Shown here: positions 11,028 to 30,733 of the stretch, one piece after another
Layout: each line of letters starts with the position of its first letter
How positions within the stretch are numbered: position 1 is the first letter of the stretch
IMG/VR virus record: IMGVR_UViG_3300046616_000314
Location: 372,001-436,000 of that record
Reading direction: 5' to 3' (one strand)
DNA length: 64,000 bases
The notes under the pieces: generated by a model
The model's input: only the letters and a program-made list of their open reading frames with translations
Databases searched by the model: none
Told to the model about the DNA's origin: nothing
Made by a program: the position numbers and the translations under genes

Positions 11028-11034
11028 TAATACT

Positions 11035-11072
11035 ATCGTCGTTCTCTTTCAATCCAGACGGAGAACGACGAT
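11035..11072. terminator. Hairpin ATCGTCGTTCTC-N14-GAGAACGACGAT between convergent genes
   Basis: 12-bp perfect inverted repeat. Confidence 0.65.
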
Positions 11073-11589: not shown

Positions 11590-11855
11590 TTCAATTTAAA
11601 CAAAGCGGCATCTTCTTCGGATGCGAAGAATAGTTCATAGACAGCATGATTAGCCGCCTTACCATCCCTACCAGTAAGGGTTCGGATACGAGGCGAGCGT
11701 TTTATGAATGGAACGAACATTTCATTCGTTTTACACCATGCCAATGCTTCATCGGTAAGCTGTACTCTGAAATTCGAATCGTCGGCTTTACTACGGGTCC
11801 ATTCGAAAATTTCGTTGGTCCAATAGATATCGGTTTGCCAGAATTCAGCTTTCAC
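11580..11855 (-). CDS. FKLKW-family paralog, member 43 (sister of 42)
   Basis: Ends LFFASEEDAALFKLKWQ; GTG start at 11855 overlaps the stop of the upstream passenger gene. Confidence 0.8.
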   Translation of the reverse strand: MKAEFWQTDIYWTNEIFEWTRSKADDSNFRVQLTDEALAWCKTNEMFVPFIKRSPRIRTLTGRDGKAANHAVYELFFASEEDAALFKLKWQ

Positions 11856-12045
11856 TAGGCGAGGCGTCCTTGCCGATCCGAGCCTTGCCAGCCTGAACTT
11901 TCTTGCGTCCAGCTTGCGATAAGGCACCTTCGAATGTTTCGAAGCGTGACGGGACTTTCGCATTGGGATGTTGCCAGATGATCCACGAACCATCGGCTTG
12001 TTTCAGTTCAATGCGCCAGAGGCGTTCAACTTGATCGGTCATCAT
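11845..12045 (-). CDS. 66-aa non-family passenger gene
   Basis: Fills the gap between members 44 and 43; protein-like sequence (LWRIELKQADGSWIIW...FETFEGALSQA). Confidence 0.6.
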   Translation of the reverse strand: MMTDQVERLWRIELKQADGSWIIWQHPNAKVPSRFETFEGALSQAGRKKVQAGKARIGKDASPSES

Positions 12046-12075
12046 CGTTCTCGAAACGTGGCTGATTCCGATATT

Positions 12076-12393
12076 TTACATCCATTTCAGCTTGAATGCA
12101 ACGGCGGCATCTTCACTGTCGAATTCAACTACGTATTCTACGTCAATGAAGCCTCCATCATCGACTTCAACCCGTCTAGCAAAACCCTTGGTGGCGCCAT
12201 CCGAAGTAAATGCTTCCATAACTTCGGAACGAAAATTCCAATAACCATTGGCGAGTGTCCCTTGACACAATGACATTCCAAATTCTTGAATGCGACCGGG
12301 GTGGGTATAACGAGCGGCGGACAGCACGCGATTCAAGCCCAGTGGATCAATAAACGAGCGACGGAACCATGAAACGCGATATGTCATAGCCAC
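12076..12393 (-). CDS. FKLKW-family paralog, member 44
   Basis: Ends VEFDSEDAAVAFKLKWM. Confidence 0.88.
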   Translation of the reverse strand: MAMTYRVSWFRRSFIDPLGLNRVLSAARYTHPGRIQEFGMSLCQGTLANGYWNFRSEVMEAFTSDGATKGFARRVEVDDGGFIDVEYVVEFDSEDAAVAFKLKWM

Positions 12394-12662
12394 TTCAACT
12401 TGAATGCAACCATGTCTTCTTCAGTCTCAAAATCGACATCGTATCTTGCAAAATTTTGACCGGGGACACCAAGGCTTGCACGCATGGCAATTGCGCCGTC
12501 CATTTTGAATAGTTCTAAGACAACGGGACGAATCATCCATTCATCGCCAACGTCTTTACCCTTTGGGGATAAGCAAAGGGTATCTCCGAAGTATTCATAA
12601 ATTCGTTGTGGTTGATGGTCGCGAACGGCTCGAAACCATGTAAGTGTATGTGTCATAACCAT
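12384..12662 (-). CDS. FKLKW-family paralog, member 45
   Basis: Ends VDFETEEDMVAFKLKWL. Confidence 0.88.
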   Translation of the reverse strand: MVMTHTLTWFRAVRDHQPQRIYEYFGDTLCLSPKGKDVGDEWMIRPVVLELFKMDGAIAMRASLGVPGQNFARYDVDFETEEDMVAFKLKWL

Positions 12663-12910
12663 TTCAGCTTAAATGCTACAGCGTCTTCATCGCACGCAAA
12701 ATCAAGTGTTATCGCGATAACACTTCGATCATTATTTGCCCAAGCTGCATGAATAAACTTTATTTCTTTGAAATTAATATTCTTGAACGCCCATGTCTTA
12801 AAATCGTCAGACCATATAGGATTATGTCTCCCCGCGCCGTCTGTATCCAACCGGACGTAGATTTCTAGGACTTTGGGGTATGGAATATAAAATATGCTTG
12901 TCATAGCCAT
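12653..12910 (-). CDS. FKLKW-family paralog, member 46
   Basis: Ends LDFACDEDAVAFKLKWL. Confidence 0.88.
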   Translation of the reverse strand: MAMTSIFYIPYPKVLEIYVRLDTDGAGRHNPIWSDDFKTWAFKNINFKEIKFIHAAWANNDRSVIAITLDFACDEDAVAFKLKWL

Positions 12911-13423
12911 TTCAACTTAAATGCAACCATGTCCTCTGGGGTAACAAAACACATATCCATTTCCGTAGTCTTCATACTATTATCGTTGAAGAATGCGGGC
13001 GGCGTGAGTTTGTGTTCTTCACACCATGCGACCATAGCAAGGCTGAGTTGTAGATACGATCCACCATGCCACATTATGGGATCGTATTTCCCCTTAGTTT
13101 GATATCGAACGGTGGCGCGAATTTTATTTTCTTCGATAAAACGTTTCGCTAGTTCAACACTATCAAATGTGAAGTCACATGAATATCGACTTTCTAGTAA
13201 ACTTATCCTGTCTGGTGTGGTGATCGTATTCGGAGAACGCGACAGATCGCCATCGCAAAGACGTTTCGTTTTGATAACACCAGAACCGGCAGAGGTTCGT
13301 TATCTCGACTTCAGAGGGCGCACGGAAATGTGGGCGATAGATCAGACGCGCTTCTTCACGGGGTTTCTTGATTGTCCCCACACGGCGCCGAAAATTGTTT
13401 GCGAAAATTCCGATCATAGCCAT
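12901..13423 (-). pseudogene. FKLKW-family double-domain member 47, split by a +1 frameshift near 13175-13195
   Basis: Frame A (13423-13175) holds the RFWCYQN core; the +1 frame is open 13299-12901 and reads YSCDFTFDSVELAKRF...AWCEEH...CFVTPEDMVAFKLKWL; fused product about 173 aa. Confidence 0.75.
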
Positions 13424-13674
13424 TTCAGCCTAAAGAGTGTCGCGGCTTCCGTTGAAGTGAATATGAGACGCCAGTGAGGTTTCTTATCCAGGGATCGGAA
13501 GGCTTCGGTAACGTGCAATGCCGGGTGGTTGATACTATTTTTCATGCACCAAACTTTGACGGCGTAATTCATTGCGTAGTGGCTACCACCGAGACAATGG
13601 TATTCGCCGTGTCTATTCAATAACACGATCTTATCGACTTGATCGGGTGTTATCTCAAAGCTCACGTAAGCCAC
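13414..13674 (-). CDS. FKLKW-family paralog, member 48
   Basis: Ends LIFTSTEAATLFRLKWL; VWCMKN core. Confidence 0.88.
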   Translation of the reverse strand: MAYVSFEITPDQVDKIVLLNRHGEYHCLGGSHYAMNYAVKVWCMKNSINHPALHVTEAFRSLDKKPHWRLIFTSTEAATLFRLKWL

Positions 13675-13675
13675 G

Positions 13676-13984
13676 TCACAACCATTTCAATTTGAAAGCG
13701 ACTAGATCATCCTCGGTCTTGAAACCAATGAACCAATGATAACGTTCGCCATTCGGATAGGGCACACCGCCTCCATGGTGTGACAACAGAGGTTCTACCA
13801 TATTTTGGTCGGAACACCATGCTATAATATCGTCGCGAATTCGTTCGCAGACCAAACCGATGCGTTGACGACAGCCATTCTCATCTTGCCAAGCTATATC
13901 ATCCCACTTCCAATAACTCACGGGATGATTGAAACGAGAATCAACTTCAGTCAATTCTTCGCCAGAATAAAATTTCAAAACCAT
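13676..13984 (-). CDS. FKLKW-family paralog, member 49
   Basis: Ends IGFKTEDDLVAFKLKWL; AWCSDQN core. Confidence 0.88.
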   Translation of the reverse strand: MVLKFYSGEELTEVDSRFNHPVSYWKWDDIAWQDENGCRQRIGLVCERIRDDIIAWCSDQNMVEPLLSHHGGGVPYPNGERYHWFIGFKTEDDLVAFKLKWL

Positions 13985-14202
13985 TTCAATTTGAAAAGAG
14001 TTGCATGAGTTTCATCCGCAAATTCGAATCCATAATGACCTAAGTAATTCACCGAGTTAGGATTTATGTCATTGATCTTAAGCCATTGTGCAAATGGTTC
14101 AGCCCATGTGTAATTATAAGACGGCGGCTCGTAATGGAAAATATCATTCAAATTAAGAGAATAACTAGCGGCGACTTTATACGTATTGTTCGTCAAAACC
14201 AT
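13975..14202 (-). CDS. FKLKW-family paralog, member 50
   Basis: Ends FEFADETHATLFKLKWF. Confidence 0.88.
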   Translation of the reverse strand: MVLTNNTYKVAASYSLNLNDIFHYEPPSYNYTWAEPFAQWLKINDINPNSVNYLGHYGFEFADETHATLFKLKWF

Positions 14203-14480
14203 TTCAGTTTAAAAAGGGTTGCTGCGGTTTCTGATGGGAAGTCCAGCGTCATCCATGATGGACAACCATCCGAATGTCTTTTTTCAATATCGAGCATTCC
14301 ACAAGACTGAAAAAACACGTTGGACGAATCAAGGTTATTGAATCTGAACCACTCGACTACATGATCTGCCCAAATAGGCACAAATACCCCAGGATCGGTT
14401 TCTTGAATCCCACGGTACAGTTTGCGCATATTCGCTAGGTCAAGATAGCCGGTGATTCTATACACTGGTTGGTTCAGCAA
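14193..14480 (-). CDS. FKLKW-family paralog, member 51 (first transcribed; sister of 50)
   Basis: Ends LDFPSETAATLFKLKWF. Confidence 0.88.
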   Translation of the reverse strand: MLNQPVYRITGYLDLANMRKLYRGIQETDPGVFVPIWADHVVEWFRFNNLDSSNVFFQSCGMLDIEKRHSDGCPSWMTLDFPSETAATLFKLKWF

Positions 14481-14640
14481 TCAGACCAAGGATTTTAGCG
14501 GGGAAATCTTTGGTGTTCCACATATGCTCAGTACCGCAAGTGGTCCAGCAATCACCATCCCAGTTGGCGACCATCATTTCAGGATACTTGGAGTCAGGAC
14601 CCCAAATAACCCAATAATAACCCTCTACGTACTTTGCCAT
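14458..14640 (-). CDS. Small Trp-rich hypothetical phage protein
   Basis: 60 aa, EGYYWVIW...ANWDGDCW; sits between gp47 and the array. Confidence 0.65.
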   Translation of the reverse strand: MAKYVEGYYWVIWGPDSKYPEMMVANWDGDCWTTCGTEHMWNTKDFPAKILGLIAEPTSV

Positions 14641-14649: not shown

Positions 14650-15708
14650 TTAGAAGTTCGGCAGGCTCTTGTAGATTTCCACCAACTTGTCGGGCTTCAG
14701 ACCGATGCTTGTCACCGACTTCAAACCTTCGACCACGATCTGATCCACCGATTGGAACACCACTTCCCCGCCGAAGTCCTGATTGGCTTCTTGCTTCGTC
14801 TGGTGCGCCAGTTCGACTTTTCGTAAACCATAGTCGTTGACGAATTTATCCTTGATATATTGGGCTTCTTCCCAGGTGATGTCAAGGTCGATGAACACAC
14901 GAGCCGTCATCTTCTGCTTAAGCATACGGTTAGCAGAGGCGGGATCAATCAGTTCCGACAGCTTCATATTGCTGAACAACGGTTGGTCGTCCCAAGCCTT
15001 GAAGAAAGGTTCCTTACCCCATTCAAGGAACATCATGCCGCGATCAGTGTCACCAGCATCAGCGAAGTTATACGGGAACTGATTGCCGATATAGACAACC
15101 TTGTCCTTTGCTTGACGGAAGTGGAAGTGACCCGAGAACACGTATTCAATACCGGGAGCATCCTTGATATCATCCGATGTAATGCCCGAACCATGGGTAG
15201 GCATTTCGATCTTGGCGTTCATTAGGAAGCCAGGAAGTTCCAAGTGCCCAAAGACATAGCGCGACTTCAGCGACTTAAGTGTCTTATACTCATCGCCAAC
15301 CAGCCAGGGGAGGATGGTGATCGCGTTCTTGCCTTCACCAAATGTGGTTGGCTTAATGATGGGCGTGATGTTCTTGATATGGCGCGACCACGACGTTGAC
15401 GACACGTCTCGCTTGTCACGGTAATAAAGGTCATGGTTGCCGGTGATAGCGTACACATTGTCGAATTCCTCCGACAGCCGTTCCAGACCACGCAACGAAT
15501 AGTCCATGGTCGAGACATTCAGGCTGAACCGATTGTCGTGCCAATCACCACCTAGAACGATGGTATCGGCACCCCAGGTTTTGGCTTGATCGATAAACCA
15601 TTCCAAGAAATCCAGATTGTCTTGGTTGGCTTGATGGCTATTGCCTGACCGACCATAGTGTTGATCGGTAAACATTGCGAGTTTTTTAAAAGGGGGAGTC
15701 GCGCTCAT
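14650..15708 (-). CDS. gp47: Recombination endonuclease subunit, Mre11/SbcD-like metallophosphoesterase (T4 gp47-like)
   Basis: Motifs FTDQHYG, GGDWHD, GNHD, FGHLE and SGHFH in the expected order; start refined to MSATPPFKK. Confidence 0.92.
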   Translation of the reverse strand: MSATPPFKKLAMFTDQHYGRSGNSHQANQDNLDFLEWFIDQAKTWGADTIVLGGDWHDNRFSLNVSTMDYSLRGLERLSEEFDNVYAITGNHDLYYRDKRDVSSTSWSRHIKNITPIIKPTTFGEGKNAITILPWLVGDEYKTLKSLKSRYVFGHLELPGFLMNAKIEMPTHGSGITSDDIKDAPGIEYVFSGHFHFRQAKDKVVYIGNQFPYNFADAGDTDRGMMFLEWGKEPFFKAWDDQPLFSNMKLSELIDPASANRMLKQKMTARVFIDLDITWEEAQYIKDKFVNDYGLRKVELAHQTKQEANQDFGGEVVFQSVDQIVVEGLKSVTSIGLKPDKLVEIYKSLPNF

Positions 15709-15709
15709 A

Positions 15710-16156
15710 CTATTTCCAAATACATAAAATACAATAACCTTCCGACAGGTAATATCCACGCTCTAGTAAAGCAGTAATCGCCGGATGTTCAGAGAGATAA
15801 CCTTTGGCTGCATCATCAGAGATTGCCGCCATCAACGCAGGTACGTCATCGGGGCTTTCAATGAATGAGAAAATTTCAGGTTCGTCCGTTACTAATTTAA
15901 CCATAATATCATGGTCGAGCACCGGATCGCCATATTTTGTTAACCGCATTATCCGATGTTTGTGTTCGGCAGGAATGTTGTAGCCAACAATCGCCCCGTC
16001 CTCATGGCGCAATAGATCGGCGTTGCGTTCCAACTCTCGTATCAGCATGTCAACATGACCCGCTGCGCTACTGGATAGAACCTGCAAATCTTGCCAAGAT
16101 GCTTTACCGAACACGCTGATCAGAGATACGAGGGTTTTGACGACTCTACTGGTCAC
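15710..16156 (-). CDS. Hypothetical protein
   Basis: 148-aa ORF overlapping the end of the methyltransferase gene. Confidence 0.6.
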   Translation of the reverse strand: MTSRVVKTLVSLISVFGKASWQDLQVLSSSAAGHVDMLIRELERNADLLRHEDGAIVGYNIPAEHKHRIMRLTKYGDPVLDHDIMVKLVTDEPEIFSFIESPDDVPALMAAISDDAAKGYLSEHPAITALLERGYYLSEGYCILCIWK

Positions 16157-17072
16157 GCAACACCTTCAGCATTTGTTGTGCGACAGCACGAATCATCGGC
16201 ACGGGAACCGAGTTACCCGTTTGCTTCTTGATCGCCGAATAGGGCACAACGATCTTATAATCAGCCGGGAAACCCTGTAGGTTCAATAGTTCCCGAGACG
16301 ATGGGCGACGAGTGCCGTTGACCAAGATGTAATTGTAAGAAGCCGTAGCTCTCAGAGCCACCGAATACGGCAGGACTGAGATATTTCCGCTCTTATTCTC
16401 GTGCCAGATGGACGGATAGAACGGAACAGACTTCAAACGTGCGCTACGCTTGGCTAGAATGTGCTCAGAAGCCTTTAAAGAGGGATCATGGTCCGCACCA
16501 GCCTCTAGGACCGTTTCAAGCCCTGGTGGGCTTCCTAGGGGCTCTGGGAAGGCAAAGGGCACGTCATCTTTGAAGCCGACGATGATTGTACGCTCACGTT
16601 TCTGCGCACACCCGAAGTCCAGGGCGTTTAGAACGGTCGAATGGACGTGGTAGCCGAGCCCTTGGAGGGTTTGTTCGATAACCGCGAACGTCTTGCCGCC
16701 ATCGTGCGTCTTGAGGTTCTTGACGTTCTCTAGGAGGAAGGCTTTGGGCTGTTTTTCTTGGATGATGCGGGCGACATCGAAAAACAATGTGCCACGGGTA
16801 TCATTGAAGCCCAACATCTTCCCGGCGCCTGAGAAGGCTTGACACGGGAAGCCGCCAACGAGAATATCGTGATCGGGGATTGTCTTTTCGTCAATCTGCG
16901 TGATGTCGCCATGGGGCTTGTCACCGAAGTTGGCTTCGTAGGTTTTTTGTGCGGCAGCATCCCATTCGGATGTAAAGACGCACTCACCACCTAGTTCTTG
17001 AAAGGGGATACGAATGCCCCCGATGCCTGCGAATAGATCAATGAATTTAAAATCGTTCCAATTGCTTGACAT
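16146..17072 (-). CDS. DNA cytosine-C5 methyltransferase (M.HhaI-like catalytic core; target unknown)
   Basis: FIDLFAGIGG, GDIT, GGFPCQAFS, ENVKNL, QKRER, LQGFP and QTGNSVPVP motifs. Confidence 0.95.
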   Translation of the reverse strand: MSSNWNDFKFIDLFAGIGGIRIPFQELGGECVFTSEWDAAAQKTYEANFGDKPHGDITQIDEKTIPDHDILVGGFPCQAFSGAGKMLGFNDTRGTLFFDVARIIQEKQPKAFLLENVKNLKTHDGGKTFAVIEQTLQGLGYHVHSTVLNALDFGCAQKRERTIIVGFKDDVPFAFPEPLGSPPGLETVLEAGADHDPSLKASEHILAKRSARLKSVPFYPSIWHENKSGNISVLPYSVALRATASYNYILVNGTRRPSSRELLNLQGFPADYKIVVPYSAIKKQTGNSVPVPMIRAVAQQMLKVLRDQ

Positions 17073-17524: not shown

Positions 17525-17883
17525 TGGGTCGTATGACTGACGAAGAATTTGACGACCTGATGTACAGAGCCCGAAGCTCTGGCTTTATCAATCATTATAC
17601 CAAGAATAGGACTGCTATTCCGCTTAGGAATGTTGAGAAAGAAGAGATTGCTCTTACTAAGGCGTATGAATTCACACACTTTATTGTGATTCCATACGAG
17701 CATGATCCGTCGTTCAATTTCTTAAATCGATTTGCGCGTTATATTGATCGCCTAAGTCGCATTGAAGATGCGTGGACTTTTGGTCCCATTATACGAGACG
17801 GCGCGATCCAAGGGATTGCCATCGCTCATTTGTTTGCCTTCCGTAGTGAGGAAGACATGATTCAATTCAGGTTGGTGTGGTGA
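17518..17883 (+). CDS. FKLKW-family relative, cluster 2 (sister of 17171)
   Basis: Ends LFAFRSEEDMIQFRLVW; GTGTGGTGATG overlap junction. Confidence 0.85.
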   Translation: MVMGRMTDEEFDDLMYRARSSGFINHYTKNRTAIPLRNVEKEEIALTKAYEFTHFIVIPYEHDPSFNFLNRFARYIDRLSRIEDAWTFGPIIRDGAIQGIAIAHLFAFRSEEDMIQFRLVW

Positions 17884-18158
17884 TGCTGATATTCATTGAC
17901 GAAACCAAACCTTTCTGGGAAGGGCTAGAAAACGATGCAGCCGAAGACGAAGAAGGCTCGTACCCTTGGTTGAAGCCAGATGTTGAATCTTGGATGAAAG
18001 CCAAAGGCATTCCTGTCGAATGGTTCAGTAAAGGCTTAAATTTTTGGTGGGCATTGAAATTCGGCAATGACGAAGACGCCATGCTTTTCAAATTGACTTA
18101 TCCTATCGGAACATATTTTGAAAATGATCCGCGCCACAAAGCGGATTGGGACCGTTAA
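17877..18158 (+). CDS. FKLKW-family relative with C-terminal extension
   Basis: WALKFGNDEDAMLFKLTYP... Confidence 0.85.
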   Translation: MVMLIFIDETKPFWEGLENDAAEDEEGSYPWLKPDVESWMKAKGIPVEWFSKGLNFWWALKFGNDEDAMLFKLTYPIGTYFENDPRHKADWDR

Positions 18159-18400
18159 TGCTACTCTTCGTAGACAACGGCGAGCTTGGCGAATGGACAG
18201 AGCCAAACCAGCAGGTTCCAAATTTCGCGCCTCATGTTTCAGCATGGATGACATCGGTGGACATCCATGATGTCGAATGGCTAGACAAAGGACCGGACTT
18301 CCTTTGGGCTCTCGTTTTCAAGAACGATGAGGATGCCATCATGTTCAAGATGCGCTATCCTGATCACACCTTTTTCGAAGACCATGAATTTAAATGGTAA
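18146..18400 (+). CDS. FKLKW-family relative with C-terminal extension
   Basis: WALVFKNDEDAIMFKMRYPDHTFFED. Confidence 0.85.
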   Translation: MGPLMLLFVDNGELGEWTEPNQQVPNFAPHVSAWMTSVDIHDVEWLDKGPDFLWALVFKNDEDAIMFKMRYPDHTFFEDHEFKW

Positions 18401-18404
18401 CGCA

Positions 18405-18773
18405 ATGCTGATCTTTATCGACAACGACAACGAAATGTATACGTGGGGCGGTAGCGGTGCTAGCGTTAACGCTTATCAAAATTATGCCCCGCCCGCTTTT
18501 GTTCCGCGTGTTCAGGAATGGTTGGACCTGCATGGCATTGTCATTGAGGGATGGTTTGACAAAGGACCGGCGTACCTTTGGGCTGTCCAATTCAAGAACG
18601 ATGAAGAAGCCATGATGTTCAAATTGTATTTTAATGATGAGACACGTTTCGAGAACGATACTCGTTCGATTTCAAACGAAGCCTATTTGAACCTAGACGC
18701 TAATCATCCAATGTATGCCACACCGCCTCGGCTGTATCCGCATCCATGTTCGGATCATCGTGGAAGCCAATAA
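18405..18773 (+). CDS. FKLKW-family relative with C-terminal extension
   Basis: MLIFIDND start (refined); WAVQFKNDEEAMMFKLYF. Confidence 0.82.
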   Translation: MLIFIDNDNEMYTWGGSGASVNAYQNYAPPAFVPRVQEWLDLHGIVIEGWFDKGPAYLWAVQFKNDEEAMMFKLYFNDETRFENDTRSISNEAYLNLDANHPMYATPPRLYPHPCSDHRGSQ

Positions 18774-18985: not shown

Positions 18986-19363
18986 TTAGATTCGCATCAG
19001 CACCTTGGCTGGATCAACGAGCATCGTTTCGCCAAGAGCGGCGTATCCGTTCAATCCCAATTCCGACATTTCATTGGCGACTTGTCGTTCATCGGCGTGC
19101 AATCGTCCGCGACCTGTCATCATATAAGTATGCAGTCGCCCGCGATGAAAATCGACAAGCTCTACGTCGTGCTTGACTTCGAAAGTCAAGATGCACGCGA
19201 TCAGATGGCGATCATTGAGATTGTTGCGGCGTGCCATAAGCTGCGCGATGATATGGTTTGGAGCGAACCACGATTTCTCTCTAGGATATTCGAACGGGGT
19301 TCTTGAGAGCGTGCCGTGATAGAGCAACGTCCCGGCTCGTAGAATGGTCTTCTCGAATTGCAT
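18986..19363 (-). CDS. ADP-ribosyltransferase-like domain protein
   Basis: LYHGT followed by an SWF element resembling the ART H-Y-E core; activity inferred. Confidence 0.55.
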   Translation of the reverse strand: MQFEKTILRAGTLLYHGTLSRTPFEYPREKSWFAPNHIIAQLMARRNNLNDRHLIACILTFEVKHDVELVDFHRGRLHTYMMTGRGRLHADERQVANEMSELGLNGYAALGETMLVDPAKVLMRI

Positions 19364-19799: not shown

Positions 19800-20675
19800 T
19801 CACCAATCGTCGTCAGGATCGATTTCGAGATATTCTATTTGATACGGAATGTTTAATTTTTGAGCCCATTCCACAACGCCTTCGGCGGGATCGCGTAGGA
19901 TAATCAACTCAACTGTTTTGTTGTTGAGCGGAAGTTCTTTGGCAACAATAACTTCCTCACTCTCCGTAGTCTGTGAGACGCGCGAGAAACCACGGTCATT
20001 ATACGGAACCATTTGATATCGTGCGGCAATGTTTTGTTGGTTCAAAACAAAAATGACGGCGGCACTACCGGGTCCGTCTTCATTGCTGTAGTTCAAACGC
20101 TCATCGCGCGAGACGCTAATACCCAGGCGGTTTTTGCCATTGATGCTGTATATCCGTCCAGCCTTGAGCACGCCGCTCTTAGCGATCATGTAGGCGCCTT
20201 CTGACGATGTACCATGATACACCGGGGCACTACGGCTCTCGTTGATTGTTCCAGGGGTCCGAGGCAAACGAACACCATCGGTCTCATGGTCAGGATCAAA
20301 TTCGAAACCGAACTTCGTATACCATTTAATTAATTGTTGTTCTGACATGGCTTGGTCATTCAAGTCTGCCAGTTTATCGATACCACGATCATCGTCGTCA
20401 TAGTGATCGAAGCGAAGATCATAATGCAATGGATGAGCGGTAAGGGTTAGCTTTACGCCAAGTTGATCGGCTACAGAGCAAAGCTCTTGCATTTTTTGAT
20501 TGCCATAGCCTTGCTTACGGTTTTCTTCCGACCATAGTTGATCCAGACTTACCGTTGTGGGGTCGCGAACAGTGAGGTCCAAACTGATATTCTTATCACC
20601 GCGCACTTGTGCGACAAGTTGGCTCGCCGGGTTCTGCGCGTTCTCGATAAGGTTGATGACAGTTCGAATGTCCAT
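19800..20675 (-). CDS. Two-domain late protein: GNAT-like domain plus ART-like domain, joined by an INES linker
   Basis: RKQGYG...LIKWYTKFGF (GNAT); VYHGTS...GISVSRD...SEEV (ART-like); N-terminus MDIRTVINLIE. Confidence 0.7.
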   Translation of the reverse strand: MDIRTVINLIENAQNPASQLVAQVRGDKNISLDLTVRDPTTVSLDQLWSEENRKQGYGNQKMQELCSVADQLGVKLTLTAHPLHYDLRFDHYDDDDRGIDKLADLNDQAMSEQQLIKWYTKFGFEFDPDHETDGVRLPRTPGTINESRSAPVYHGTSSEGAYMIAKSGVLKAGRIYSINGKNRLGISVSRDERLNYSNEDGPGSAAVIFVLNQQNIAARYQMVPYNDRGFSRVSQTTESEEVIVAKELPLNNKTVELIILRDPAEGVVEWAQKLNIPYQIEYLEIDPDDDW

Positions 20676-20680
20676 ATGTA

Positions 20681-20694
20681 TATTTACCTAAATA
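20681..20694. promoter_or_regulatory. Back-to-back late promoters TAAATA (minus 20681-20686, plus 20689-20694)
   Basis: T4 gp55-type -10 box in front of both divergent genes. Confidence 0.65.
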
Positions 20695-20698
20695 TTCG

Positions 20699-22495
20699 AT
20701 GCGCGAATTCATGAAAATCGTAGAGTCTGCTGAATACGACCAATGGTCTCCTGACCGTGGCATTGATGATTTCGTCCGCGAAGAATTTAGCACGGGTGGA
20801 TGCGGTTATCTGGCACTGGCTCTACATGAATTAACCGGTTGGGGCATTCGTGCCGAAATCGATGTTCCCCGCGATCAATACGAGCGCGTTGGCGGCGGGA
20901 TCGAACATATTTGGGTAGAGAACCCACAATACCATGCTGTAGACATTAATGGCGTTCACACAAGCGGGTTTGCTCAAACGAAATACAGTGATCCCAATAA
21001 TCTTGGAGACGTTGTAAAAATCGATCCCGATTATCTGCTGCATACATCAAACGATAAAGAAATGATGCAATGGGCTCGCGATCTAGTACGATTATTCCCA
21101 AAGCATTTTGGTTTGAAGGTAAATGAAAGTATCGAAAGTGGAGAGGGATTTTCAGTAAGCCCAGAGTCCGCCAAGAAAATTCTGTCTAGCTTCTATCTGC
21201 AACGCGGAACAAAGATCGGCAAGAACACACGCTTATGGCGCGGTGTATCTGCTGATAGCGGGTCTGGGATGGCGACCTACGGGACTGGATTCTATTTCAC
21301 CGCCGATAGGAAGCGCGCGAAAATATATGGAGACGTGGTAGAGATTGACCGCTCGAATCTCCCCCTGAACCCGTTCAGATTCAACACCAACAATGACTAT
21401 GAGGTTTGGCTTTACGAAACAGGTGAAACGCTTGGTTATGACGATCCCCGAGCGTTCGCAAATGCCTACCAAGACGTTAGATTTTTGGTTCAGGCTATCG
21501 ATCCTTACGCAGACGGAATCCAAGTCATGACCGGATCAGATGCGATGTTCGTCCGCTATCCTACCCTCAATATCACAGAGAATGCGCCTTACGAGCCGGG
21601 GGCAATGCGTAACTTCATGAACATCTTGGAAGGCGATATGCCCCAACTGTACATCCGCTTCGGTGATCTACCGGAGGGCGGACGTTCCAAGATTGGTGCG
21701 GCTCCGAACTGGTATAAAGCCCAGGCTCAAAAAGATACGCATGAAGCAGGCATTTCGGTTCTGCCCGTTTCGTTCGATGATGAAATGAACCGTTGGGCGA
21801 TCTCGGCAAACAACTACGCCACTCTTGATGCGCTATTCCATTACAAACGTCCCGCCTATCTAGTCTATGGCGAGCATGTCACCGATGAAGATGGCTACGA
21901 TCAATACGGTATGGACGATGAGCCATTGCTTAAGAATGTTAAGATCATCAAGCAACTACAATACGATGAGCTTTGGGTTCCGGCTTGGGGCAAAGACCCG
22001 TTGCCAGAAGAGTATCTAGAGGCGCGCGAGGATAATTTATCAGAAACCCATGAACAAATTTTTGAATTGTTCGGATCACCAACATCTTTCCGTGTGATCG
22101 ATCCAAAAATCGTTCCAATACAGAATGTGTGTGCTGCATATTGCTTTGCAGTAGGAGAGACAGAGTACATAGTATACATGACGCGGGAGGACGAAGATGA
22201 CTACGTTTGTAGCTTCGGCGAAGTGCTCTGGTATAACAGCGAAGGGCGTGCAAAACTCAGTTATGATACTGACGACCAAGGTAGTCCGTTTAAGGTCTAC
22301 AGCGGCGTTAAAAATGCCTTCCTGTCGTTCATACGCGATTTTGAACCGGAGACCATTAGCTTTGGGGGCTATAATGATAAACAAAATCACCTTTATCGAG
22401 CGATCCTGAGTAAGCCAAAGAATCTTCCGCCGGGCTATTCGTTTGCCGGGAGGGTGTTCGACATGCTGATGATACAGAGAAATACTCGCGCCTAA
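20699..22495 (+). CDS. Four-domain late protein, putative packaged polyprotein (Cys-His-Asp domain, ART-like domain, two unknown domains)
   Basis: GGCGYLALAL...EHIW...VDING; LWRG...YGTGFYFT; linkers VNES, ITE, LSE; the N-terminal-type motif recurs internally (MREFMKIVES, MRNFMNILE). Confidence 0.7.
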   Translation: MREFMKIVESAEYDQWSPDRGIDDFVREEFSTGGCGYLALALHELTGWGIRAEIDVPRDQYERVGGGIEHIWVENPQYHAVDINGVHTSGFAQTKYSDPNNLGDVVKIDPDYLLHTSNDKEMMQWARDLVRLFPKHFGLKVNESIESGEGFSVSPESAKKILSSFYLQRGTKIGKNTRLWRGVSADSGSGMATYGTGFYFTADRKRAKIYGDVVEIDRSNLPLNPFRFNTNNDYEVWLYETGETLGYDDPRAFANAYQDVRFLVQAIDPYADGIQVMTGSDAMFVRYPTLNITENAPYEPGAMRNFMNILEGDMPQLYIRFGDLPEGGRSKIGAAPNWYKAQAQKDTHEAGISVLPVSFDDEMNRWAISANNYATLDALFHYKRPAYLVYGEHVTDEDGYDQYGMDDEPLLKNVKIIKQLQYDELWVPAWGKDPLPEEYLEAREDNLSETHEQIFELFGSPTSFRVIDPKIVPIQNVCAAYCFAVGETEYIVYMTREDEDDYVCSFGEVLWYNSEGRAKLSYDTDDQGSPFKVYSGVKNAFLSFIRDFEPETISFGGYNDKQNHLYRAILSKPKNLPPGYSFAGRVFDMLMIQRNTRA

Positions 22496-22586: not shown

Positions 22587-22592
22587 TAAATA
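22587..22592 (+). promoter_or_regulatory. Late promoter TAAATA
   Basis: Upstream of the 22647 operon. Confidence 0.55.
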
Positions 22593-23135: not shown

Positions 23136-25376
23136 ATGAGCTTCGATCCAATTACATTTAGTTCTATCGCAATGAACAAGCCGCCGGTTGGTTCTTTCTT
23201 GCGCGTAATGACTAATTTCTCACACACTAACTACGTTGACACTAACCAACGTATCGACGTTACTCAATACCCAATGCTAGCCGATCAAGTTGCCGGTGGT
23301 TTCCAAGGTGATTACTTCAAGTCGGTTTCGTTCCCTTCTCTAGATTCGCAAGCTCCTGCATCGTTCGCTAACTTGGGCGACATGGCGTGTTCCTATACCA
23401 CAGGCGGTCACACCTATTTCATTTTTGCGAGCACGACTACACTGAAGATGTATCGTACTATTGGTTCTACGATTGACACCGGTGTCGAATTTGTTCAAGA
23501 CATCACCAATCCCTCTGCTTTGGCTCCTAATGCTCTAGTCTTCTCAGTTGCAAACGGACACGTCTTTATTTCGGGAACTACACAGAACGCCAACGTATAC
23601 CGTTATGACATTACTGTTGGTCCGTCTTCCATGACCACGATTACTCTGAATCTTTCCAGAACATGGAGATTTGTCTACGGAAGTGGTCGCTTGGTTGCTT
23701 ATGCAACTTCGATTGGTAGCGTCCTGTCCACAACGGGCAACGTTCAGGTCAGCTTGGACAACGGAGCCACATGGACCAATCACACCGCCCTGGCGGCTCT
23801 GTCCACCGTTACGTCAAGCATGGCGTACGGCAACGGTTTCTTCGTCGTTGTAACACAAGGTACTGGCGCGGCAACCAACACCGCGCGTTCGACTGATGGT
23901 CTGACATGGGTTGCTGGTTCGGGAGCCCCTGCGGGTGCTCTGTCGTCGGTTTCATTCAATCCTACGAATAATCTTTTCACAATTTATTCCATGACTAACG
24001 TGATCGCGGCTTATCGTTCGTCCAGTGCTGCGGCTCCTACCACTTGGGTCGTTTGTTCGGGCAACACGTCCAACGGTTATCTCTACGGCGATTGTACTCC
24101 GAACGGTGTGACGATTGCTCACGGTAAGTCTCCGTACGTTAACTCGTTCTATACCTCGCTTGACAACGTTACGTTTGCGGCTGGTTTTCTTGGAAACGGA
24201 TACAATGCTGCGATGTATGATCGCGGTTTTGCTATGATTGGCGAAACGTTCGTGATGTTCGGATCGAGCATTTCGGGAGCGTTGACCGCTGGTCCATCGC
24301 TGCGCGTCTATTACAAGTATTCAAATGACTATGGCGTGACTTGGACTGATGGTGGTTTCGTTGATCAGTACGCTTATACAACACAGAACTATCTCTATCC
24401 CTGCATTGGTTCGGATACGAGCAAGATCGTAATGTTTGAGAACCAAGCTGCTATGGGTTCGGATACAGTTTGGATGCCGCGTTGGTCAGGTATCGTCAGC
24501 AATGACGGTGGCACCACGTGGGAAAATATGTCCATCGAGACCCCGGAACTTGTTAACTGGGGCGGTGTATTCGCGACTACCGATGGCAAGTTCGTTGCTT
24601 GGGGTCGCCGTCACACAAACAACCTTGTGTACGTTGCGACATCTACTGATGGTGCGATCTGGATTGTTGTTCAGAACGGTACTTTCGTCAGCCCAACACC
24701 AACTGGTTCGATGGCGATTGGAACGAATGGCAACATGATGTTCACACAATCCAACTCGACAAATACTGTAGCGATCTCGTCTGACTATGGCGCAACTTGG
24801 ACTTCCAAGACTGTTCCGGCATCGGCACTCTATAAGGCTGCGTTTTTCGGTAATGTTGCTGTTGCACTTAACACGGCAACAGGATCGTACTATTCAACTA
24901 ATGGTGGTACTTCATGGTCGCTTTGTGCCATGACGGTCATCGGGGCTTCGACTATCGCTGGCTATGCTGCTAACAGCACGTATGGTCTGGTGACGTTGAC
25001 CAACAGCAACATTTGTTTCGTCACGAGCGATGGTATCTCTTGGATTCAAAAGACCCTTCCGACGACGATGGGTGGCGTAAGCCCGACTGTTGTCAACGAT
25101 TGGTTCATGATCCCGACCGGTGGTGGCACGTACTATCGCACGCAAGACTTCCTGTCGTGGGAACTGGCTTATATCAATGCAGACGTGAGCAATTTGGGTG
25201 CGTACACGGTCATGAATAGCAATCCGAACAATTCGTCGGGTGCGATCCATGGTCCGACACTTGGTGCGTCTACGGGTACGTTCTGGGTGGCTGATACTGA
25301 AGTGACGAACATGCGTCGCATTCCGTATGTGGCGCCCGACCTAGCTAATACAAAGTACGTCGTGGTGGCGCGCTAA
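23136..25376 (+). CDS. Beta-propeller (Asp-box/BNR repeat) tail fibre or receptor-binding protein
   Basis: About nine S-x-D-G-x-x-W boxes (SLDNGATW, STDGLTW, SNDYGVTW, SNDGGTTW, SSDYGATW, STNGGTSW and others). Confidence 0.75.
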   Translation: MSFDPITFSSIAMNKPPVGSFLRVMTNFSHTNYVDTNQRIDVTQYPMLADQVAGGFQGDYFKSVSFPSLDSQAPASFANLGDMACSYTTGGHTYFIFASTTTLKMYRTIGSTIDTGVEFVQDITNPSALAPNALVFSVANGHVFISGTTQNANVYRYDITVGPSSMTTITLNLSRTWRFVYGSGRLVAYATSIGSVLSTTGNVQVSLDNGATWTNHTALAALSTVTSSMAYGNGFFVVVTQGTGAATNTARSTDGLTWVAGSGAPAGALSSVSFNPTNNLFTIYSMTNVIAAYRSSSAAAPTTWVVCSGNTSNGYLYGDCTPNGVTIAHGKSPYVNSFYTSLDNVTFAAGFLGNGYNAAMYDRGFAMIGETFVMFGSSISGALTAGPSLRVYYKYSNDYGVTWTDGGFVDQYAYTTQNYLYPCIGSDTSKIVMFENQAAMGSDTVWMPRWSGIVSNDGGTTWENMSIETPELVNWGGVFATTDGKFVAWGRRHTNNLVYVATSTDGAIWIVVQNGTFVSPTPTGSMAIGTNGNMMFTQSNSTNTVAISSDYGATWTSKTVPASALYKAAFFGNVAVALNTATGSYYSTNGGTSWSLCAMTVIGASTIAGYAANSTYGLVTLTNSNICFVTSDGISWIQKTLPTTMGGVSPTVVNDWFMIPTGGGTYYRTQDFLSWELAYINADVSNLGAYTVMNSNPNNSSGAIHGPTLGASTGTFWVADTEVTNMRRIPYVAPDLANTKYVVVAR

Positions 25377-26252: not shown

Positions 26253-26450
26253 CTACCAAAAATTTGTGTCATCGTTCGTACGGTCAATACCAGATCGACG
26301 GCTATTGTAAGACCGACTATTGGAACGTCGTTCGGCACGATCAGCGGCTTTGTTTTGTAGTCGCGTAGCCCAATGACCATGGTAATATTCGCGTTCAGCC
26401 TCTTCAGCTATTTCACTGAAGAACCGCCAGATGGCTCGAAAAAATTTCAT
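26253..26450 (-). CDS. Small hypothetical protein
   Basis: MKFFRAIWRFFSEIAEEAEREYY; start refined. Confidence 0.5.
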   Translation of the reverse strand: MKFFRAIWRFFSEIAEEAEREYYHGHWATRLQNKAADRAERRSNSRSYNSRRSGIDRTNDDTNFW

Positions 26451-26508
26451 AACATCAATGTACCGTAGACCGTTTGCCTGTTGCAATATTTTTCGGTATG
26501 ATCCCGCC

Positions 26509-26778
26509 ATGATTCATTTGTTCCTAACCGATGTAAACCTGTGGGATTGGTACAGCGAGGTCTATAGCATCGCGCACGCCCCCATTGACGATATCCCGGT
26601 ATTCGTAAAGCCCGTGCGCGATTGGCTGGCTTCCGTTCAGATGCCTACGCCCAAGTTCGTCAATCTCGGAAATGATTCTTTTTGGGCAATCGAATTCGAA
26701 AATGAGAATGATGCGGCTATGTTTAGGATGAAATATCCAAATGATACTTCGTTCAGTATTTCGAGCTTGACAACCTAA
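26509..26778 (+). CDS. FKLKW-family relative with C-terminal extension
   Basis: FWAIEFENENDAAMFRMKYPND; same subfamily as 17877-18773. Confidence 0.82.
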   Translation: MIHLFLTDVNLWDWYSEVYSIAHAPIDDIPVFVKPVRDWLASVQMPTPKFVNLGNDSFWAIEFENENDAAMFRMKYPNDTSFSISSLTT

Positions 26779-30416: not shown

Positions 30417-30733
30417 ATCCTATCGCAATTAAAAGATTCGTTCGGATTATCAAAACCCGTTTTTGGCGTCGATATACTCTGGATTGTTCTTATCAATCGA
30501 ACCACAACGATTCCACGTTGGTCAAACGATGGGACAAAATTATTCGTGTCGTCAAACATCCAAAGGTACTCACCGAACTTTATCTAATAGAAGAGGTTGC
30601 TGCTTGGTGTAAAGAACATCGTATGGCAGAACCTTTTCCCGATCTTGAGTACGACGACGATGACAATTATCTCTACATCATTCGTTTTAAGAAAGCGGCG
30701 GATGTAATTCAGTTTCGGATGAAATGGCTATGA
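30407..30733 (+). CDS. FKLKW-family paralog, cluster 3 (sister of 30084)
   Basis: AWCKEH core; ends IRFKKAADVIQFRMKWL; start refined to MAM. Confidence 0.87.
   Translation: MAMNPIAIKRFVRIIKTRFWRRYTLDCSYQSNHNDSTLVKRWDKIIRVVKHPKVLTELYLIEEVAAWCKEHRMAEPFPDLEYDDDDNYLYIIRFKKAADVIQFRMKWL

What the first reader, a model, noticed from the sequence alone, without database searches (positions are those of the whole stretch)
19800..22495. Divergent late-expressed effector polyproteins with prohead-protease-like linkers
Seen: back-to-back TAAATA boxes drive two genes made of concatenated domains. One has GNAT-like plus ART-like domains. The other has a Cys-His-Asp domain, an ART-like domain and two unknown domains. 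Domains are separated by I/L/V-x-E motifs (INES, VNES, ITE, LSE), and the N-terminal peptide type (MDIRTVINLIE, MREFMKIVES) recurs internally (MRNFMNILE at 21605). Established: T4 gp21 cleaves after Glu in L/I-x-E, and T4 packages processed internal proteins and the ADP-ribosyltransferase Alt. Inference: capsid-packaged polyproteins cut into separate host-takeover or anti-defence enzymes and injected with the DNA.
Basis: partly seen in the sequence, partly recalled or inferred. Interest (0 to 1): 0.65.

Follow-up and report, generated by a model that had tools for sequence, protein, structure and literature searches.

The report
Tagged multi-enzyme effectors of a megaphage
Two back-to-back late genes of an uncultured 561-kb T4-related phage encode chains of unrelated enzymes that carry T4-like capsid-targeting tags and protease sites at their start and between domains. 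They are probably loaded into the phage head, trimmed and injected with the DNA, though nobody has yet seen the proteins.

Summary
Two divergent ORFs, A (291 aa, minus strand) and B (598 aa, plus strand), sit 23 bp apart behind back-to-back TAAATA boxes. The window lies in a 561-kb rhizosphere phage that has a T4-type head module: a gp21-family protease, a gp23 capsid protein and a scaffold.

Genome-wide, TAAATA-N4/5-ATG occurs 52 times against about 7 expected. About 25 ORFs start with a tag, M-R-x-[FLWY]-x-x-[IL]-x-E, that resembles the T4 capsid-targeting sequence MKTYQEFIAE. Tag and promoter are associated (odds ratio 28, p = 1e-13).

B consists of four independently mobile modules:
- B1, YunG-like, with an invariant His-Asp and a nearly invariant Cys
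- B2, a divergent ART-PolyVal relative
- B3, DUF6098-like
- B4, a weakly GNAT-like fold

A is a GNAT-like domain plus a Tpt1/DarT-type ADP-ribosyltransferase fold (Z 11.5).

Each module occurs elsewhere as a stand-alone protein with its own tag. The junctions in A and B align with the ends of those tags and are predicted to be disordered.

Other tagged proteins in the genome include Acb1, ART-PolyVal and SprT-like domains.

Packaging and cleavage are inferred, not shown; cleavage between domains is the least certain step. I rate this a new variant of known kinds: T4 internal proteins and polyvalent proteins.

The parts
20681..20686 (-). TAAATA late-promoter-like box for gene A, 5 nt before its ATG
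   Evidence: Sequence. Genome-wide excess of TAAATA-N4/5-ATG.
20689..20694 (+). TAAATA late-promoter-like box for gene B, 4 nt before its ATG
   Evidence: Sequence. Genome-wide excess. The same arrangement precedes the homologue P0003 in a 570-kb relative.
20643..20675 (-). Gene A N-terminal tag, residues 1-11 (MDIRTVINLIE), candidate propeptide ending LIE-11
20238..20642 (-). Gene A residues 12-146: GNAT-like domain (motif RKQGYG 53-58, WYTKFGF 118-124), ending at INE-146
   Evidence: BLAST to P0008, whose aligned region is Pfam Acetyltransf_7. Weak but coherent GNAT hits of the family profile in PDB. AlphaFold model poor here, pLDDT about 50.
19803..20237 (-). Gene A residues 147-291: ADP-ribosyltransferase-fold domain of Tpt1/KptA-DarT type (YHGT 153-156, SVSR 187-190, SEEV 239-242)
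   Evidence: pLDDT about 90. Foldseek E 7e-5 to Tpt1 and 3e-4 to DarT. VIA Z 11.5 (7yw4, rmsd 2.5 A over 107 residues) and Z 10 for DarT. Eight family members, three of which start with an N-tag directly before the YH.T motif.
20699..20725 (+). Gene B N-terminal tag, residues 1-9 (MREFMKIVE), ending IVE-9
   Evidence: Helical in the model.
20726..21127 (+). B1, residues 10-143: YunG-like domain with conserved C35, H70, D82; ends at VNE-143
   Evidence: 38-sequence alignment. pLDDT above 90. Atlas features 0.94 and TM 0.62-0.67 to YunG / Phage_YunG-like clusters. No Pfam or PDB sequence hit.
21128..21580 (+). B2, residues 144-294: divergent ART-PolyVal-related domain (R181, Y199, D272 invariant or nearly so); ends at ITE-294
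   Evidence: Pfam ART-PolyVal E 0.055, below cut-off. hhalign of the family against this genome's ART-PolyVal domains gives probability 88%, E 3e-6. Best BFVD fold hit is an ART-PolyVal-like protein. Occurs inside polyvalent proteins of 1000-3700 aa.
21581..21631 (+). Spacer plus internal copy of the N-tag (M303-E311, MRNFMNILE, at 21605-21631), ending ILE-311
   Evidence: It aligns with the true N-termini of stand-alone B3 proteins such as P0004 and P0068. Residues 278-301 have pLDDT below 50; 302-309 are helical.
21632..22045 (+). B3, residues 312-449: DUF6098-like domain (conserved R320, S330, E349, S353, R384, D406, E408), function unknown
   Evidence: Alignment. 11 of 32 members hit Pfam DUF6098, best E 8.5e-5. 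Atlas TM 0.50 to a DUF6098 cluster.
22046..22066 (+). Linker, residues 450-456 (THEQIFE), a tag remnant between candidate sites LSE-449 and IFE-456
   Evidence: Aligns with MRAHEIISE and MRAYEIITE at the N-termini of P0010 and P0015. pLDDT below 50 over 444-459.
22067..22495 (+). B4, residues 457-598 plus stop: alpha/beta domain with a weakly GNAT-like fold (DUF6934-like), no acetyl-CoA motif seen
   Evidence: VIA Z 6.2 to phage Mu Mom and to many GNATs, a middling score. Atlas TM 0.67 by the row to a viral DUF6934 cluster. PHROG 16075 E 7.5e-4. Paralogue at the N-terminus of L002.
22587..22592 (+). Third TAAATA box, at the head of the following tail/baseplate gene block
   Evidence: Downstream genes are virion, tail and baseplate proteins.

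Best explanation
A and B are precursors of virion-borne effector enzymes of a T4-superfamily megaphage.

Shown:
- Both genes sit directly behind T4-late-type TAAATA boxes in a leaderless arrangement.
- Both start with a 9-11-residue amphipathic tag ending in [ILV]-x-Glu. About 25 otherwise unrelated proteins of this genome carry the same tag.
- The phage encodes a gp21-family prohead protease, a gp23 capsid protein and a scaffold.
- A and B are chains of independently mobile enzyme modules.
- Their junctions are homologous to the ends of N-terminal tags of stand-alone relatives.

Inferred:
- The tag works like the T4 capsid-targeting sequence. It takes the precursor into the scaffolding core of the prohead, and the protease cuts it off after the Glu.
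- The same motif in the flexible linkers (A: INE-146; B: VNE-143, ITE-294, ILE-311, LSE-449 or IFE-456) lets the protease free the single enzymes inside the head.
- The enzymes leave with the DNA and act before any phage gene is expressed.

Likely activities, by fold or family only:
- acyl transfer (A's N-terminal domain)
- NAD-dependent modification of nucleic acid (A's C-terminal domain, Tpt1/DarT-like)
- thiol hydrolase or transferase (B1)
- ADP-ribosylation (B2)
- unknown (B3, B4)
For: - Head module: Peptidase_S77 E 5.5e-27; Gp23 E 7.8e-78; adjacent acidic scaffold ORFs; protease catalytic His and Ser aligned with T4 gp21.
- Conserved cleavage sites: T4 gp23 site LTE65|A aligns with LME|S, and gp21 LIE-9 aligns with LTE-6.
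- T4 rules: a 10-residue CTS, residues 4 and 7 for targeting, 8 and 10 for processing, cut after L/I-x-E (PMC9026906). The CTS MKTYQEFIAE is confirmed in print. T4 Alt starts MELITELFDE.
- Promoter: TAAATA-N4/5-ATG at 52 sites against about 7 expected. It also precedes an untagged 2251-aa virion protein.
- Tag and promoter are associated: odds ratio 27.7, p = 1e-13.
- The hydrophobic tag positions use many synonymous codons, so selection acts on the peptide.
- The tag precedes at least 8 unrelated domains, including ART-PolyVal (3e-19), Acb1 anti-CBASS (1.4e-37) and SprT-like.
- B's four modules each occur alone with their own tag.
- Junction homology: A's TINE|SRSAPVYH matches the paralogue's MFIHEILCE|GRDAPLYH. 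B's HEQIFE|LFG matches MRAHEIISE|LFG. B 303-311 is a full internal tag.
- [ILVM]-[NTS]-E is found at 23-36% of junctions against 7% background.
- The three junctions of B are its main low-confidence (pLDDT below 50) segments.
- The same promoter and tag occur in a 570-kb relative with 58% GC.
- The genes abut baseplate and tail genes, as alt does in T4 (PMC5512222).
Against: - There is no protein, RNA or virion data. The only run holding this DNA is a DNA metagenome.
- [ILVM]-x-E is a short motif found in about a third of random 22-residue windows. B has 14 such sites and most lie inside folded domains.
- The junction statistics use related sequences and acidic linkers, so they overstate independence.
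- The cultured relatives (Phosso, PA5oct, Atu_ph07) lack the promoter arrangement and these domains. PA5oct has no such tags. No experimental system therefore carries the inference.
- 'Late' rests only on likeness to the T4 late promoter.
- The Arg-2 codon is CGC in 17 of 23 tags, so part of the N-terminal conservation may be a nucleotide signal.
Confidence: 0.55

Rival explanations
1. A and B are intact polyvalent proteins. The N-terminal tag is used and removed as in T4, but the proteins stay whole in the head and act as multi-domain effectors. The [ILV]-x-E motifs and the internal MRNFMNILE are only relics of fusions between neighbouring tagged genes, perhaps helped by recombination between the conserved promoter-plus-tag DNA.
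For: - Polyvalent proteins with 2-15 domains are thought to act as single polypeptides or to carry their own peptidase (PMC5512222).
- B2 occurs in giants of 1000-3700 aa where no tag-like linkers are evident.
- A complete internal tag with its Met is found only once in this genome, which fits a recent fusion.
- The motif is short and common.
Against: - In several junctions the Met-Arg half of the tag is lost while [ILV]-[NT]-E-[SG] is kept, across different neighbouring domains: RVNES, DITES, EIINES, NITE, PITES. This looks like selection on the site itself.
- The linkers are predicted to be flexible and exposed.
- T4 gp21 cuts accessible L/I-x-E sites with few other determinants, and cuts Alt at both ends.
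Confidence: 0.25
2. The tag has nothing to do with the capsid. It could be an N-terminal amphipathic helix, or an mRNA-level signal, needed for translation of leaderless late transcripts, for assembly into some other complex, or for membrane or compartment targeting. On this view the enzymes act inside the producing cell late in infection, for example by modifying progeny DNA/RNA or excluding competitors.
For: - The tag is strongly tied to the leaderless promoter arrangement.
- The Arg-2 codon is biased to CGC.
- Acb1 is not known to me as a virion protein in T4 (my own knowledge, not tested here).
- There is no virion data.
Against: - Tags also occur behind ordinary Shine-Dalgarno leaders (L002) and inside B, where no transcript starts.
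- Many leaderless late genes, including a virion protein, lack the tag.
- Hydrophobic positions vary in codon but not in residue class.
- The tag's length, pattern and terminal [ILV]-x-E match the T4 CTS and the specificity implied by this phage's own capsid protein site.
- Anti-defence enzymes made only late are of little use unless they are carried into the next cell.
Confidence: 0.15
3. Chance. On this view the motifs are coincidental features of ordinary multi-domain proteins and the TAAATA boxes are AT-rich noise.
For: Within the window alone the 10-mer is not over-represented: 5 against 3.5 expected. [ILVM]-x-E is frequent.
Against: - The genome-wide spacing peak is 24 + 28 against 3.5 expected per spacing.
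- Tag-promoter association has p = 1e-13.
- The tags recur on dozens of metagenomic homologues.
- The system is conserved in a relative of different GC content.
Confidence: 0.03

Closest known systems
T4 internal proteins IPI-III and Alt, with the capsid-targeting sequence and gp21 processing
   Same: - The same head module is present (gp21-family protease, gp23 capsid protein).
- There is a propeptide of about 10 residues, with hydrophobic residues near positions 4 and 7 and L/I-x-Glu at its end.
- One tag is placed on a diverse, fast-changing set of anti-defence or host-takeover proteins.
- The promoter box is of the T4 late type.
- The genes lie beside baseplate genes, as alt does.
   Different: - There is no sequence homology of the cargo to the IPs or Alt. 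The ARTs here are Tpt1/DarT-like and ART-PolyVal-like, not the R-S-E Alt clade (PMC5512222).
- About 25 tagged genes are present instead of a handful.
- Cargo is chained into 2-4-domain precursors with tag-derived linkers.
- The start codon lies 4-5 nt after the box, a leaderless arrangement.
- Nothing has been shown experimentally.
Polyvalent proteins of phages and conjugative elements (Iyer et al. 2017, PMC5512222)
   Same: - Several unrelated catalytic domains sit in one polypeptide.
- The domain repertoire overlaps: ART, GNAT, peptidase-like, zincin/SprT.
- B2 is itself found inside polyvalent proteins of 1000-3700 aa next to ART-PolyVal domains.
- The predicted role is delivery with the DNA.
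   Different: - A and B are small (291 and 598 aa) and have no built-in metallopeptidase.
- Processing is proposed to use the prohead protease, at linkers derived from a capsid-targeting tag. I did not find that link described in that paper.
Ejection/inner-body proteins of phiKZ, 201phi2-1 and SPN3US, cut by gp21-like proteases
   Same: Giant phages load many proteins into the head. A diverged gp21 homologue cuts them after Glu in a three-residue motif.
   Different: - Those proteases prefer S/A/G-x-E, and the propeptides are often longer than 100 residues (PMC5694885).
- Here the motif is the T4-like [ILV]-x-E with a short tag.
- This phage belongs to the T4/Atu_ph07/PA5oct lineage, not to the phiKZ group.
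DarT and Tpt1/KptA, ADP-ribosyltransferase-fold enzymes that act on nucleic acids
   Same: A residues 147-291 superpose on the yeast Tpt1 NAD lobe (Z 11.5, rmsd 2.5 A, 107 residues) and on whole DarT (Z 10, about 137 residues). The domain has a strand-1 His (YHGT) and a later acidic pair.
   Different: - Sequence identity is 10-15%, with no Pfam match.
- There is no Tpt1 RNA-binding lobe and no DarG-type partner next door.
- Substrate and chemistry are untested.

Membership tests
T4-type CTS-tagged, gp21-processed head proteins | The phage encodes a gp21-family (Peptidase_S77) prohead protease with catalytic His and Ser | tested here: met
   PF03420 E 5.5e-27, 92.8 bits, above cut-off. His and Ser align with T4 gp21.
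T4-type CTS-tagged, gp21-processed head proteins | N-terminal propeptide of about 10 residues ending in L/I-x-Glu, with hydrophobic residues near positions 4 and 7 | tested here: met
   A: MDIRTVINLIE. B: MREFMKIVE. About 25 further ORFs carry the tag. The T4 rules are taken from PMC9026906.
T4-type CTS-tagged, gp21-processed head proteins | Protease specificity L/I-x-Glu in this phage | tested here: inconclusive
   The T4 gp23 site LTE65|A aligns with LME|S in this capsid protein, and gp21 LIE-9 aligns with LTE-6. This is an inference by homology, not a cleavage assay.
T4-type CTS-tagged, gp21-processed head proteins | Late transcription | tested here: inconclusive
   A T4-late-like TAAATA box lies at a fixed distance from the ATG and also precedes virion genes. 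No RNA data are available.
T4-type CTS-tagged, gp21-processed head proteins | Present in virions in processed form and ejected into the host | not testable with these tools
   The phage is uncultured and only one DNA metagenome run holds it.
T4-type CTS-tagged, gp21-processed head proteins | Sequence homology of the cargo to T4 IPI-III or Alt | tested here: not met
   No Pfam or PHROG hit to those families. The resemblance is in mechanism, not in descent of the cargo.
Polyvalent proteins (Iyer 2017) | Two or more unrelated effector-type domains in one polypeptide, shuffled among relatives | tested here: met
   A has 2 modules and B has 4. The 258 relatives each share one module, in other orders and contexts.
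Polyvalent proteins (Iyer 2017) | Domains belong to the polyvalent-protein domain network | tested here: met
   B2 lies inside proteins of 1000-3700 aa that also hold ART-PolyVal domains. GNAT and ART are listed classes.
Polyvalent proteins (Iyer 2017) | Own zincin metallopeptidase or other built-in processing domain | tested here: not met
   None is present in A or B. A separate tagged SprT-like protein exists elsewhere in the genome.
ADP-ribosyltransferase superfamily (A residues 147-291) | ART fold | tested here: met
   pLDDT about 90. Z 11.5 to Tpt1 and Z 10 to DarT, followed by other ARTs down the list.
ADP-ribosyltransferase superfamily (A residues 147-291) | Catalytic His in strand 1 and an acidic residue in strand 5; NAD use | tested here: inconclusive
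   The YH.T, G.S.[ST]R and E-E motifs are conserved in 6 family members. No residue-level superposition was available, and NAD binding was not tested.
Pfam ART-PolyVal PF18760 (B residues 144-294) | Score above the curated cut-off, with an H-Y-D active site | tested here: not met
   14.7 bits against a 31.2 cut-off. The strand-1 position is Arg181, not His; Y199 and D272 are kept. Family-to-family hhalign gives probability 88%. B2 is therefore a distant relative, not a member.
GNAT acetyltransferases (A residues 12-146) | Pfam match or GNAT fold, with the motif A R/Q-x-x-G-x-G/A | tested here: inconclusive
   No direct Pfam hit. Motif RKQGYG is present. The homologue P0008 scores Acetyltransf_7 at 27.7 bits. 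The family profile hits only GNATs among natural PDB proteins, at E 0.02-2. The model is poor.
YunG / Phage_YunG-like PF24585/PF24591 (B residues 10-143) | Family match | tested here: inconclusive
   Atlas features 0.94 with all ten named hits in this family, and TM 0.62-0.67. Only one of 38 members hits Pfam, at E 0.045.
DUF6098 PF19593 (B residues 312-449) | Family match | tested here: inconclusive
   11 of 32 family members match at E up to 0.05, best 8.5e-5, but B itself does not. Atlas TM 0.50.

The most novel reading that the evidence does not exclude
A clade of uncultured rhizosphere megaphages may have turned the T4 capsid-targeting tag plus its gp21 cleavage site into a portable cassette for packing and releasing proteins. 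Any enzyme gene placed behind the leaderless late promoter and tag would be loaded into the head. Neighbouring tagged genes could fuse into polyproteins that the prohead protease cuts apart again inside the capsid. The virion would then deliver some 25-30 ready-made enzymes, including an Acb1 anti-CBASS nuclease, several ARTs, GNAT-like domains and SprT-like domains, ahead of any gene expression. That would amount to capsid-internal polyprotein processing in a DNA phage.
Probability: 0.4. Interest if true: 0.8.

Novelty: new variant of a known kind. Interest (0 to 1): 0.62.

Why it matters
How very large phages survive the first minutes of infection, before their genes are read, is largely unknown for uncultured lineages.

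If the reading is right, a short sequence rule would identify the injected protein arsenal of a whole clade directly from metagenomes. The rule is a late box, a tag of 9-11 residues and [ILV]-x-Glu. It flags about 25 candidates in this genome alone, most with no known function.

The reading would also link two bodies of knowledge that have been treated apart: T4 internal-protein targeting and polyvalent proteins. It suggests how multi-domain effectors arise, by fusion of tagged genes.

Finally, it would offer short tags and linkers usable for loading foreign proteins into T4-type heads.

All of this can be tested with ordinary biochemistry on recombinant protease and substrates.

Tried and rejected
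- No close relatives in GenBank phages. megablast and tblastn of A and B against 50,697 phage records found nothing. The word search with A found only itself.
- One alignment of full-length B with fragments of all four modules failed. MAFFT stacked unrelated fragments on top of each other. Alignment A1 was discarded. B was folded with a deep alignment for B1 only and two sequences for each other module (A6).
- As a result the B2, B3 and B4 models are of middling confidence. The whole-model fold searches were filled by B4. B1, B2 and B3 were therefore not properly tested against PDB by structure. The absence of hits there is not evidence of new folds.
- Foldseek of the whole B model against PDB gave nothing significant.
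- Profile searches of B1, B2, B3 and B4 against PDB sequences gave nothing significant.
- I looked for experimental support in cultured relatives. PA5oct, which has virion mass-spectrometry annotation, has neither the promoter spacing peak nor the tags. Phosso and Atu_ph07 lack the TAAATA-N4/5-ATGCG pattern; single-sequence searches with A and B found nothing in the three records, and my domain profiles found nothing in Phosso. Phosso has only three tag-like N-termini.
- A literature search for YunG, DUF6098 and DUF6934 returned only name collisions.
- No RNA run holds this DNA, so expression and transcript starts could not be examined.
- The neighbouring 125-aa ORF (18986-19363) with 'LLYHGT' gave only E 0.029 to my ART-PolyVal profile, so it is unresolved.
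- Complex prediction was not used. An enzyme-substrate or tag-scaffold contact is unlikely to pass that test, and a failure would say nothing.
- Genetic code 11 was used throughout.

Full report
**What is there**

The window is bases 372001-436000 of a 561,116-bp IMG/VR virus record that CheckV rates 97% complete. The only public run that holds the region is a rhizosphere DNA metagenome. Its independent assembly gives the same sequence without any difference.

Two ORFs diverge from a 23-bp spacer: A at 19800..20675 (-), 291 aa, and B at 20699..22495 (+), 598 aa. The spacer carries TAAATA on each strand, at 20681-20686 (-) and 20689-20694 (+). These boxes lie 5 and 4 nt before the two ATGs. A third box at 22587 heads the next gene block.

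**Is it more than chance?**

Inside the window the box is not over-represented. In the whole genome, however, 188 TAAATA hexamers are followed by ATG after exactly 4 or 5 nt at 24 and 28 sites, against 3.5 expected per spacing.

Forty-nine of these sites open ORFs of at least 60 aa, and 22 of those begin Met-Arg. A strict tag pattern (M-[RK]-x-h-x-x-h-x0-2-E) is found on 16 of 50 genes with the box and on 13 of 777 without it (odds ratio 27.7, p = 1e-13). Several of the 13 are clear tags behind ordinary leaders.

The hydrophobic tag positions use many synonymous codons, so the peptide is under selection. Only the Arg-2 codon, CGC in 17 of 23 tags, hints at an additional nucleotide constraint. 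The same box and tag precede homologues in a 570-kb contig with 58% GC.

**The phage**

The phage has a T4-type head module, which lies outside the window:
- a Peptidase_S77 (gp21) protease (E 5.5e-27)
- a Gp23 major capsid protein (E 7.8e-78)
- acidic scaffold-like ORFs and a portal-sized ORF beside them

Aligned with T4 proteins taken from NC_000866, the protease keeps the catalytic His and Ser. The T4 gp23 maturation site LTE65|A falls on LME|S of this capsid protein, and T4 gp21 LIE-9 falls on LTE-6.

By protease identity the nearest cultured phages are Sinorhizobium phage Phosso (66%), then PA5oct and Atu_ph07 (53%).

To the right of B lie tail, baseplate and virion genes: a gp5-like hub with lysozyme, a baseplate wedge protein, and structural proteins of 1577 and 2251 aa. 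The 2251-aa protein has the same leaderless box. That supports reading the box as a late promoter, by analogy with T4 only.

**The tag**

The T4 capsid-targeting sequence has 10 residues (MKTYQEFIAE). Residues 4 and 7 serve targeting and residues 8 and 10 serve processing. gp21 cuts after L/I-x-Glu (PMC9026906). T4 Alt begins MELITELFDE.

The tags here have the same length and layout. Examples are MREFMKIVE, MRQWINIVE, MRAYEILNE, MRAFELFEE, MRLSELFEE and MRKYMDIINE.

They precede unrelated domains:
- ART-PolyVal (3e-19)
- an Acb1 anti-CBASS enzyme (1.4e-37)
- an SprT-like zincin
- the A and B modules
- a 530-629-aa paralogue family

An anti-defence enzyme behind a late box makes most sense if it is carried into the next cell. 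That is an inference.

**Anatomy of B**

An exhaustive search found 258 relatives, and each matches one of four segments. Each segment occurs as a stand-alone protein of 110-170 aa with its own N-terminal tag. B2 also occurs inside proteins of 1000-3700 aa that hold ART-PolyVal domains.

- B1 (10-143) has invariant H70 and D82 and a nearly invariant C35. It models at pLDDT above 90. It looks like YunG / Phage_YunG-like proteins in the ESM Atlas (0.94; TM 0.62-0.67). It has no Pfam or PDB sequence match.
- B2 (144-294) is below the Pfam cut-off for ART-PolyVal. Its family profile nevertheless aligns with this genome's ART-PolyVal domains at 88% probability, with R181, Y199 and D272 where that family has H, Y and D. 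The best viral fold match is an ART-PolyVal-like protein.
- B3 (312-449) is DUF6098-like.
- B4 (457-598) gives only GNAT-fold neighbours at middling Z (6.2; phage Mu Mom is first) and a viral DUF6934 cluster.

**Anatomy of A**

The C-terminal half models at pLDDT about 90. It matches the NAD lobe of Tpt1 (Z 11.5) and whole DarT (Z 10), with other ADP-ribosyltransferases below them. It is therefore an ART fold of the nucleic-acid-directed kind, not the Alt kind.

The N-terminal half is poorly modelled. Three things suggest GNAT:
- motif RKQGYG
- a homologue that scores Pfam Acetyltransf_7
- a family profile that hits only GNATs among natural PDB proteins, and only weakly

**The junctions**

This is the core of the case. 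Stand-alone relatives end and begin where A and B have their [ILV]-x-E motifs.
- B1 proteins stop at ...HFGI(KV), against B's HFGLKVNE|S.
- B2 proteins start MRKWINLTE|S or MRKYISIVE|S.
- B3 proteins start MRFYQITE|A or MRNWINLLE|S, aligned with B 303-311.
- B4 proteins start MRAHEIISE|LFG, aligned with B's THEQIFE|LFG.
- A's TINE|SRSAPVYH aligns with the paralogue's MFIHEILCE|GRDAPLYH.

In multi-domain relatives the Met-Arg half is usually gone but [ILV]-[NT]-E-[SG] remains. Among relatives of up to 800 aa, [ILVM]-[NTS]-E is seen at 23% of upstream and 36% of downstream junction windows, against 7% of all windows. Those sequences are related, so this is supportive rather than rigorous.

In the model of B, three of the low-confidence (pLDDT below 50) stretches, 143-150, 278-301 and 444-459, are exactly the three junctions. 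The other long ones, 187-197 and 326-351, lie inside B2 and B3. Both tags are short helices. Most other [ILVM]-x-E sites lie inside folded domains.

**Interpretation**

The best reading is that A and B are late-made precursors. A CTS-like tag targets them to the prohead core, and the gp21-like protease trims them. I put roughly two in three on that part.

The protease probably also cuts them apart at the linkers; I put that part somewhat below even odds. The main rival keeps the tag function but leaves the proteins whole, as polyvalent proteins, with the linker motifs as fusion scars. A weaker rival gives the tag a role unrelated to the capsid.

Nothing here shows expression, packaging, cleavage or injection.

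**What is known and what is new**

The mechanism is that of T4 internal proteins and Alt. The idea of injected multi-domain effectors is that of polyvalent proteins (PMC5512222). Processing of many head proteins after Glu is known from the phiKZ-like phages (PMC5694885).

New here:
- the combination of the two ideas, with tag-derived, protease-type linkers between shuffled effector modules
- the size of the tagged set
- the leaderless late arrangement
- the cargo, including Acb1 and a Tpt1/DarT-like ART

The cultured relatives lack the system. It is therefore a trait of an uncultured clade and needs recombinant tests. I rate it a new variant of a known kind, of moderate to high interest.

Noticed in passing
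whole genome G000; in the window e.g. 60844 (-), 20675 (-), 20699 (+): Start codons lie 4-5 nt after an [A/C]TAAATA box at 52 sites, which implies leaderless or nearly leaderless late mRNAs. The capsid gene instead has the box plus an 18-nt leader with AGGAG. Phosso, Atu_ph07 and PA5oct do not share this spacing.
   Followed up: partly
G000:C1:155115-156191 (+), outside the window (locus L019): An Acb1 anti-CBASS homologue (Pfam E 1.4e-37) carries the N-terminal tag MRAFELFEE and the late box. It is a candidate virion-delivered anti-CBASS enzyme.
   Followed up: partly
G000:C1:52785-54668, 112841-118219, 121918-123510 (loci L021, L018, L013, L016): A paralogue family of 530-629-aa proteins, all starting MRxxELxE(A/K)RRNPxxNxK, has no Pfam match. 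Its members are the largest tagged proteins without any functional lead.
   Followed up: no
window 18986-19363 (-): A 125-aa ORF just beyond A contains 'LLYHGT', reminiscent of ART strand 1. It gives only E 0.029 to my ART-PolyVal profile and carries no tag. Unresolved.
   Followed up: partly
window 18327-18773 (+), with paralogues at about window 17877-18400, 26431-26778 and 30724-30948: A small-protein family is repeated several times around the locus (BLAST 25-41% identity, E down to 1e-15). Function unknown.
   Followed up: no
window 16146-17072 (-) and 14650-15759 (-): A C5 cytosine DNA methyltransferase (E 5e-90) and a calcineurin-like phosphoesterase lie upstream of the effector pair.
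   Followed up: no
window 23136-25376 (+), 41296-43284 (+), 48168-52901 (-), 54089-60844 (-), 61352-63679 (-): A structural block lies here. It comprises a BNR-repeat 746-aa protein, a gp5-like baseplate hub with SLT lysozyme, two giant virion proteins (1577 and 2251 aa, PHROG 10938) and a baseplate wedge subunit.
   Followed up: partly
tags genome-wide: The Arg at tag position 2 is encoded by CGC in 17 of 23 cases, although CGT is equally common in the genome. This may be a nucleotide-level preference at the transcription or translation start.
   Followed up: no
window 1-14500: The left part of the window is packed with many short ORFs (about 90-110 aa), mostly on the minus strand. They have no annotation. 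ARAGORN finds no tRNA genes in the window.
   Followed up: no
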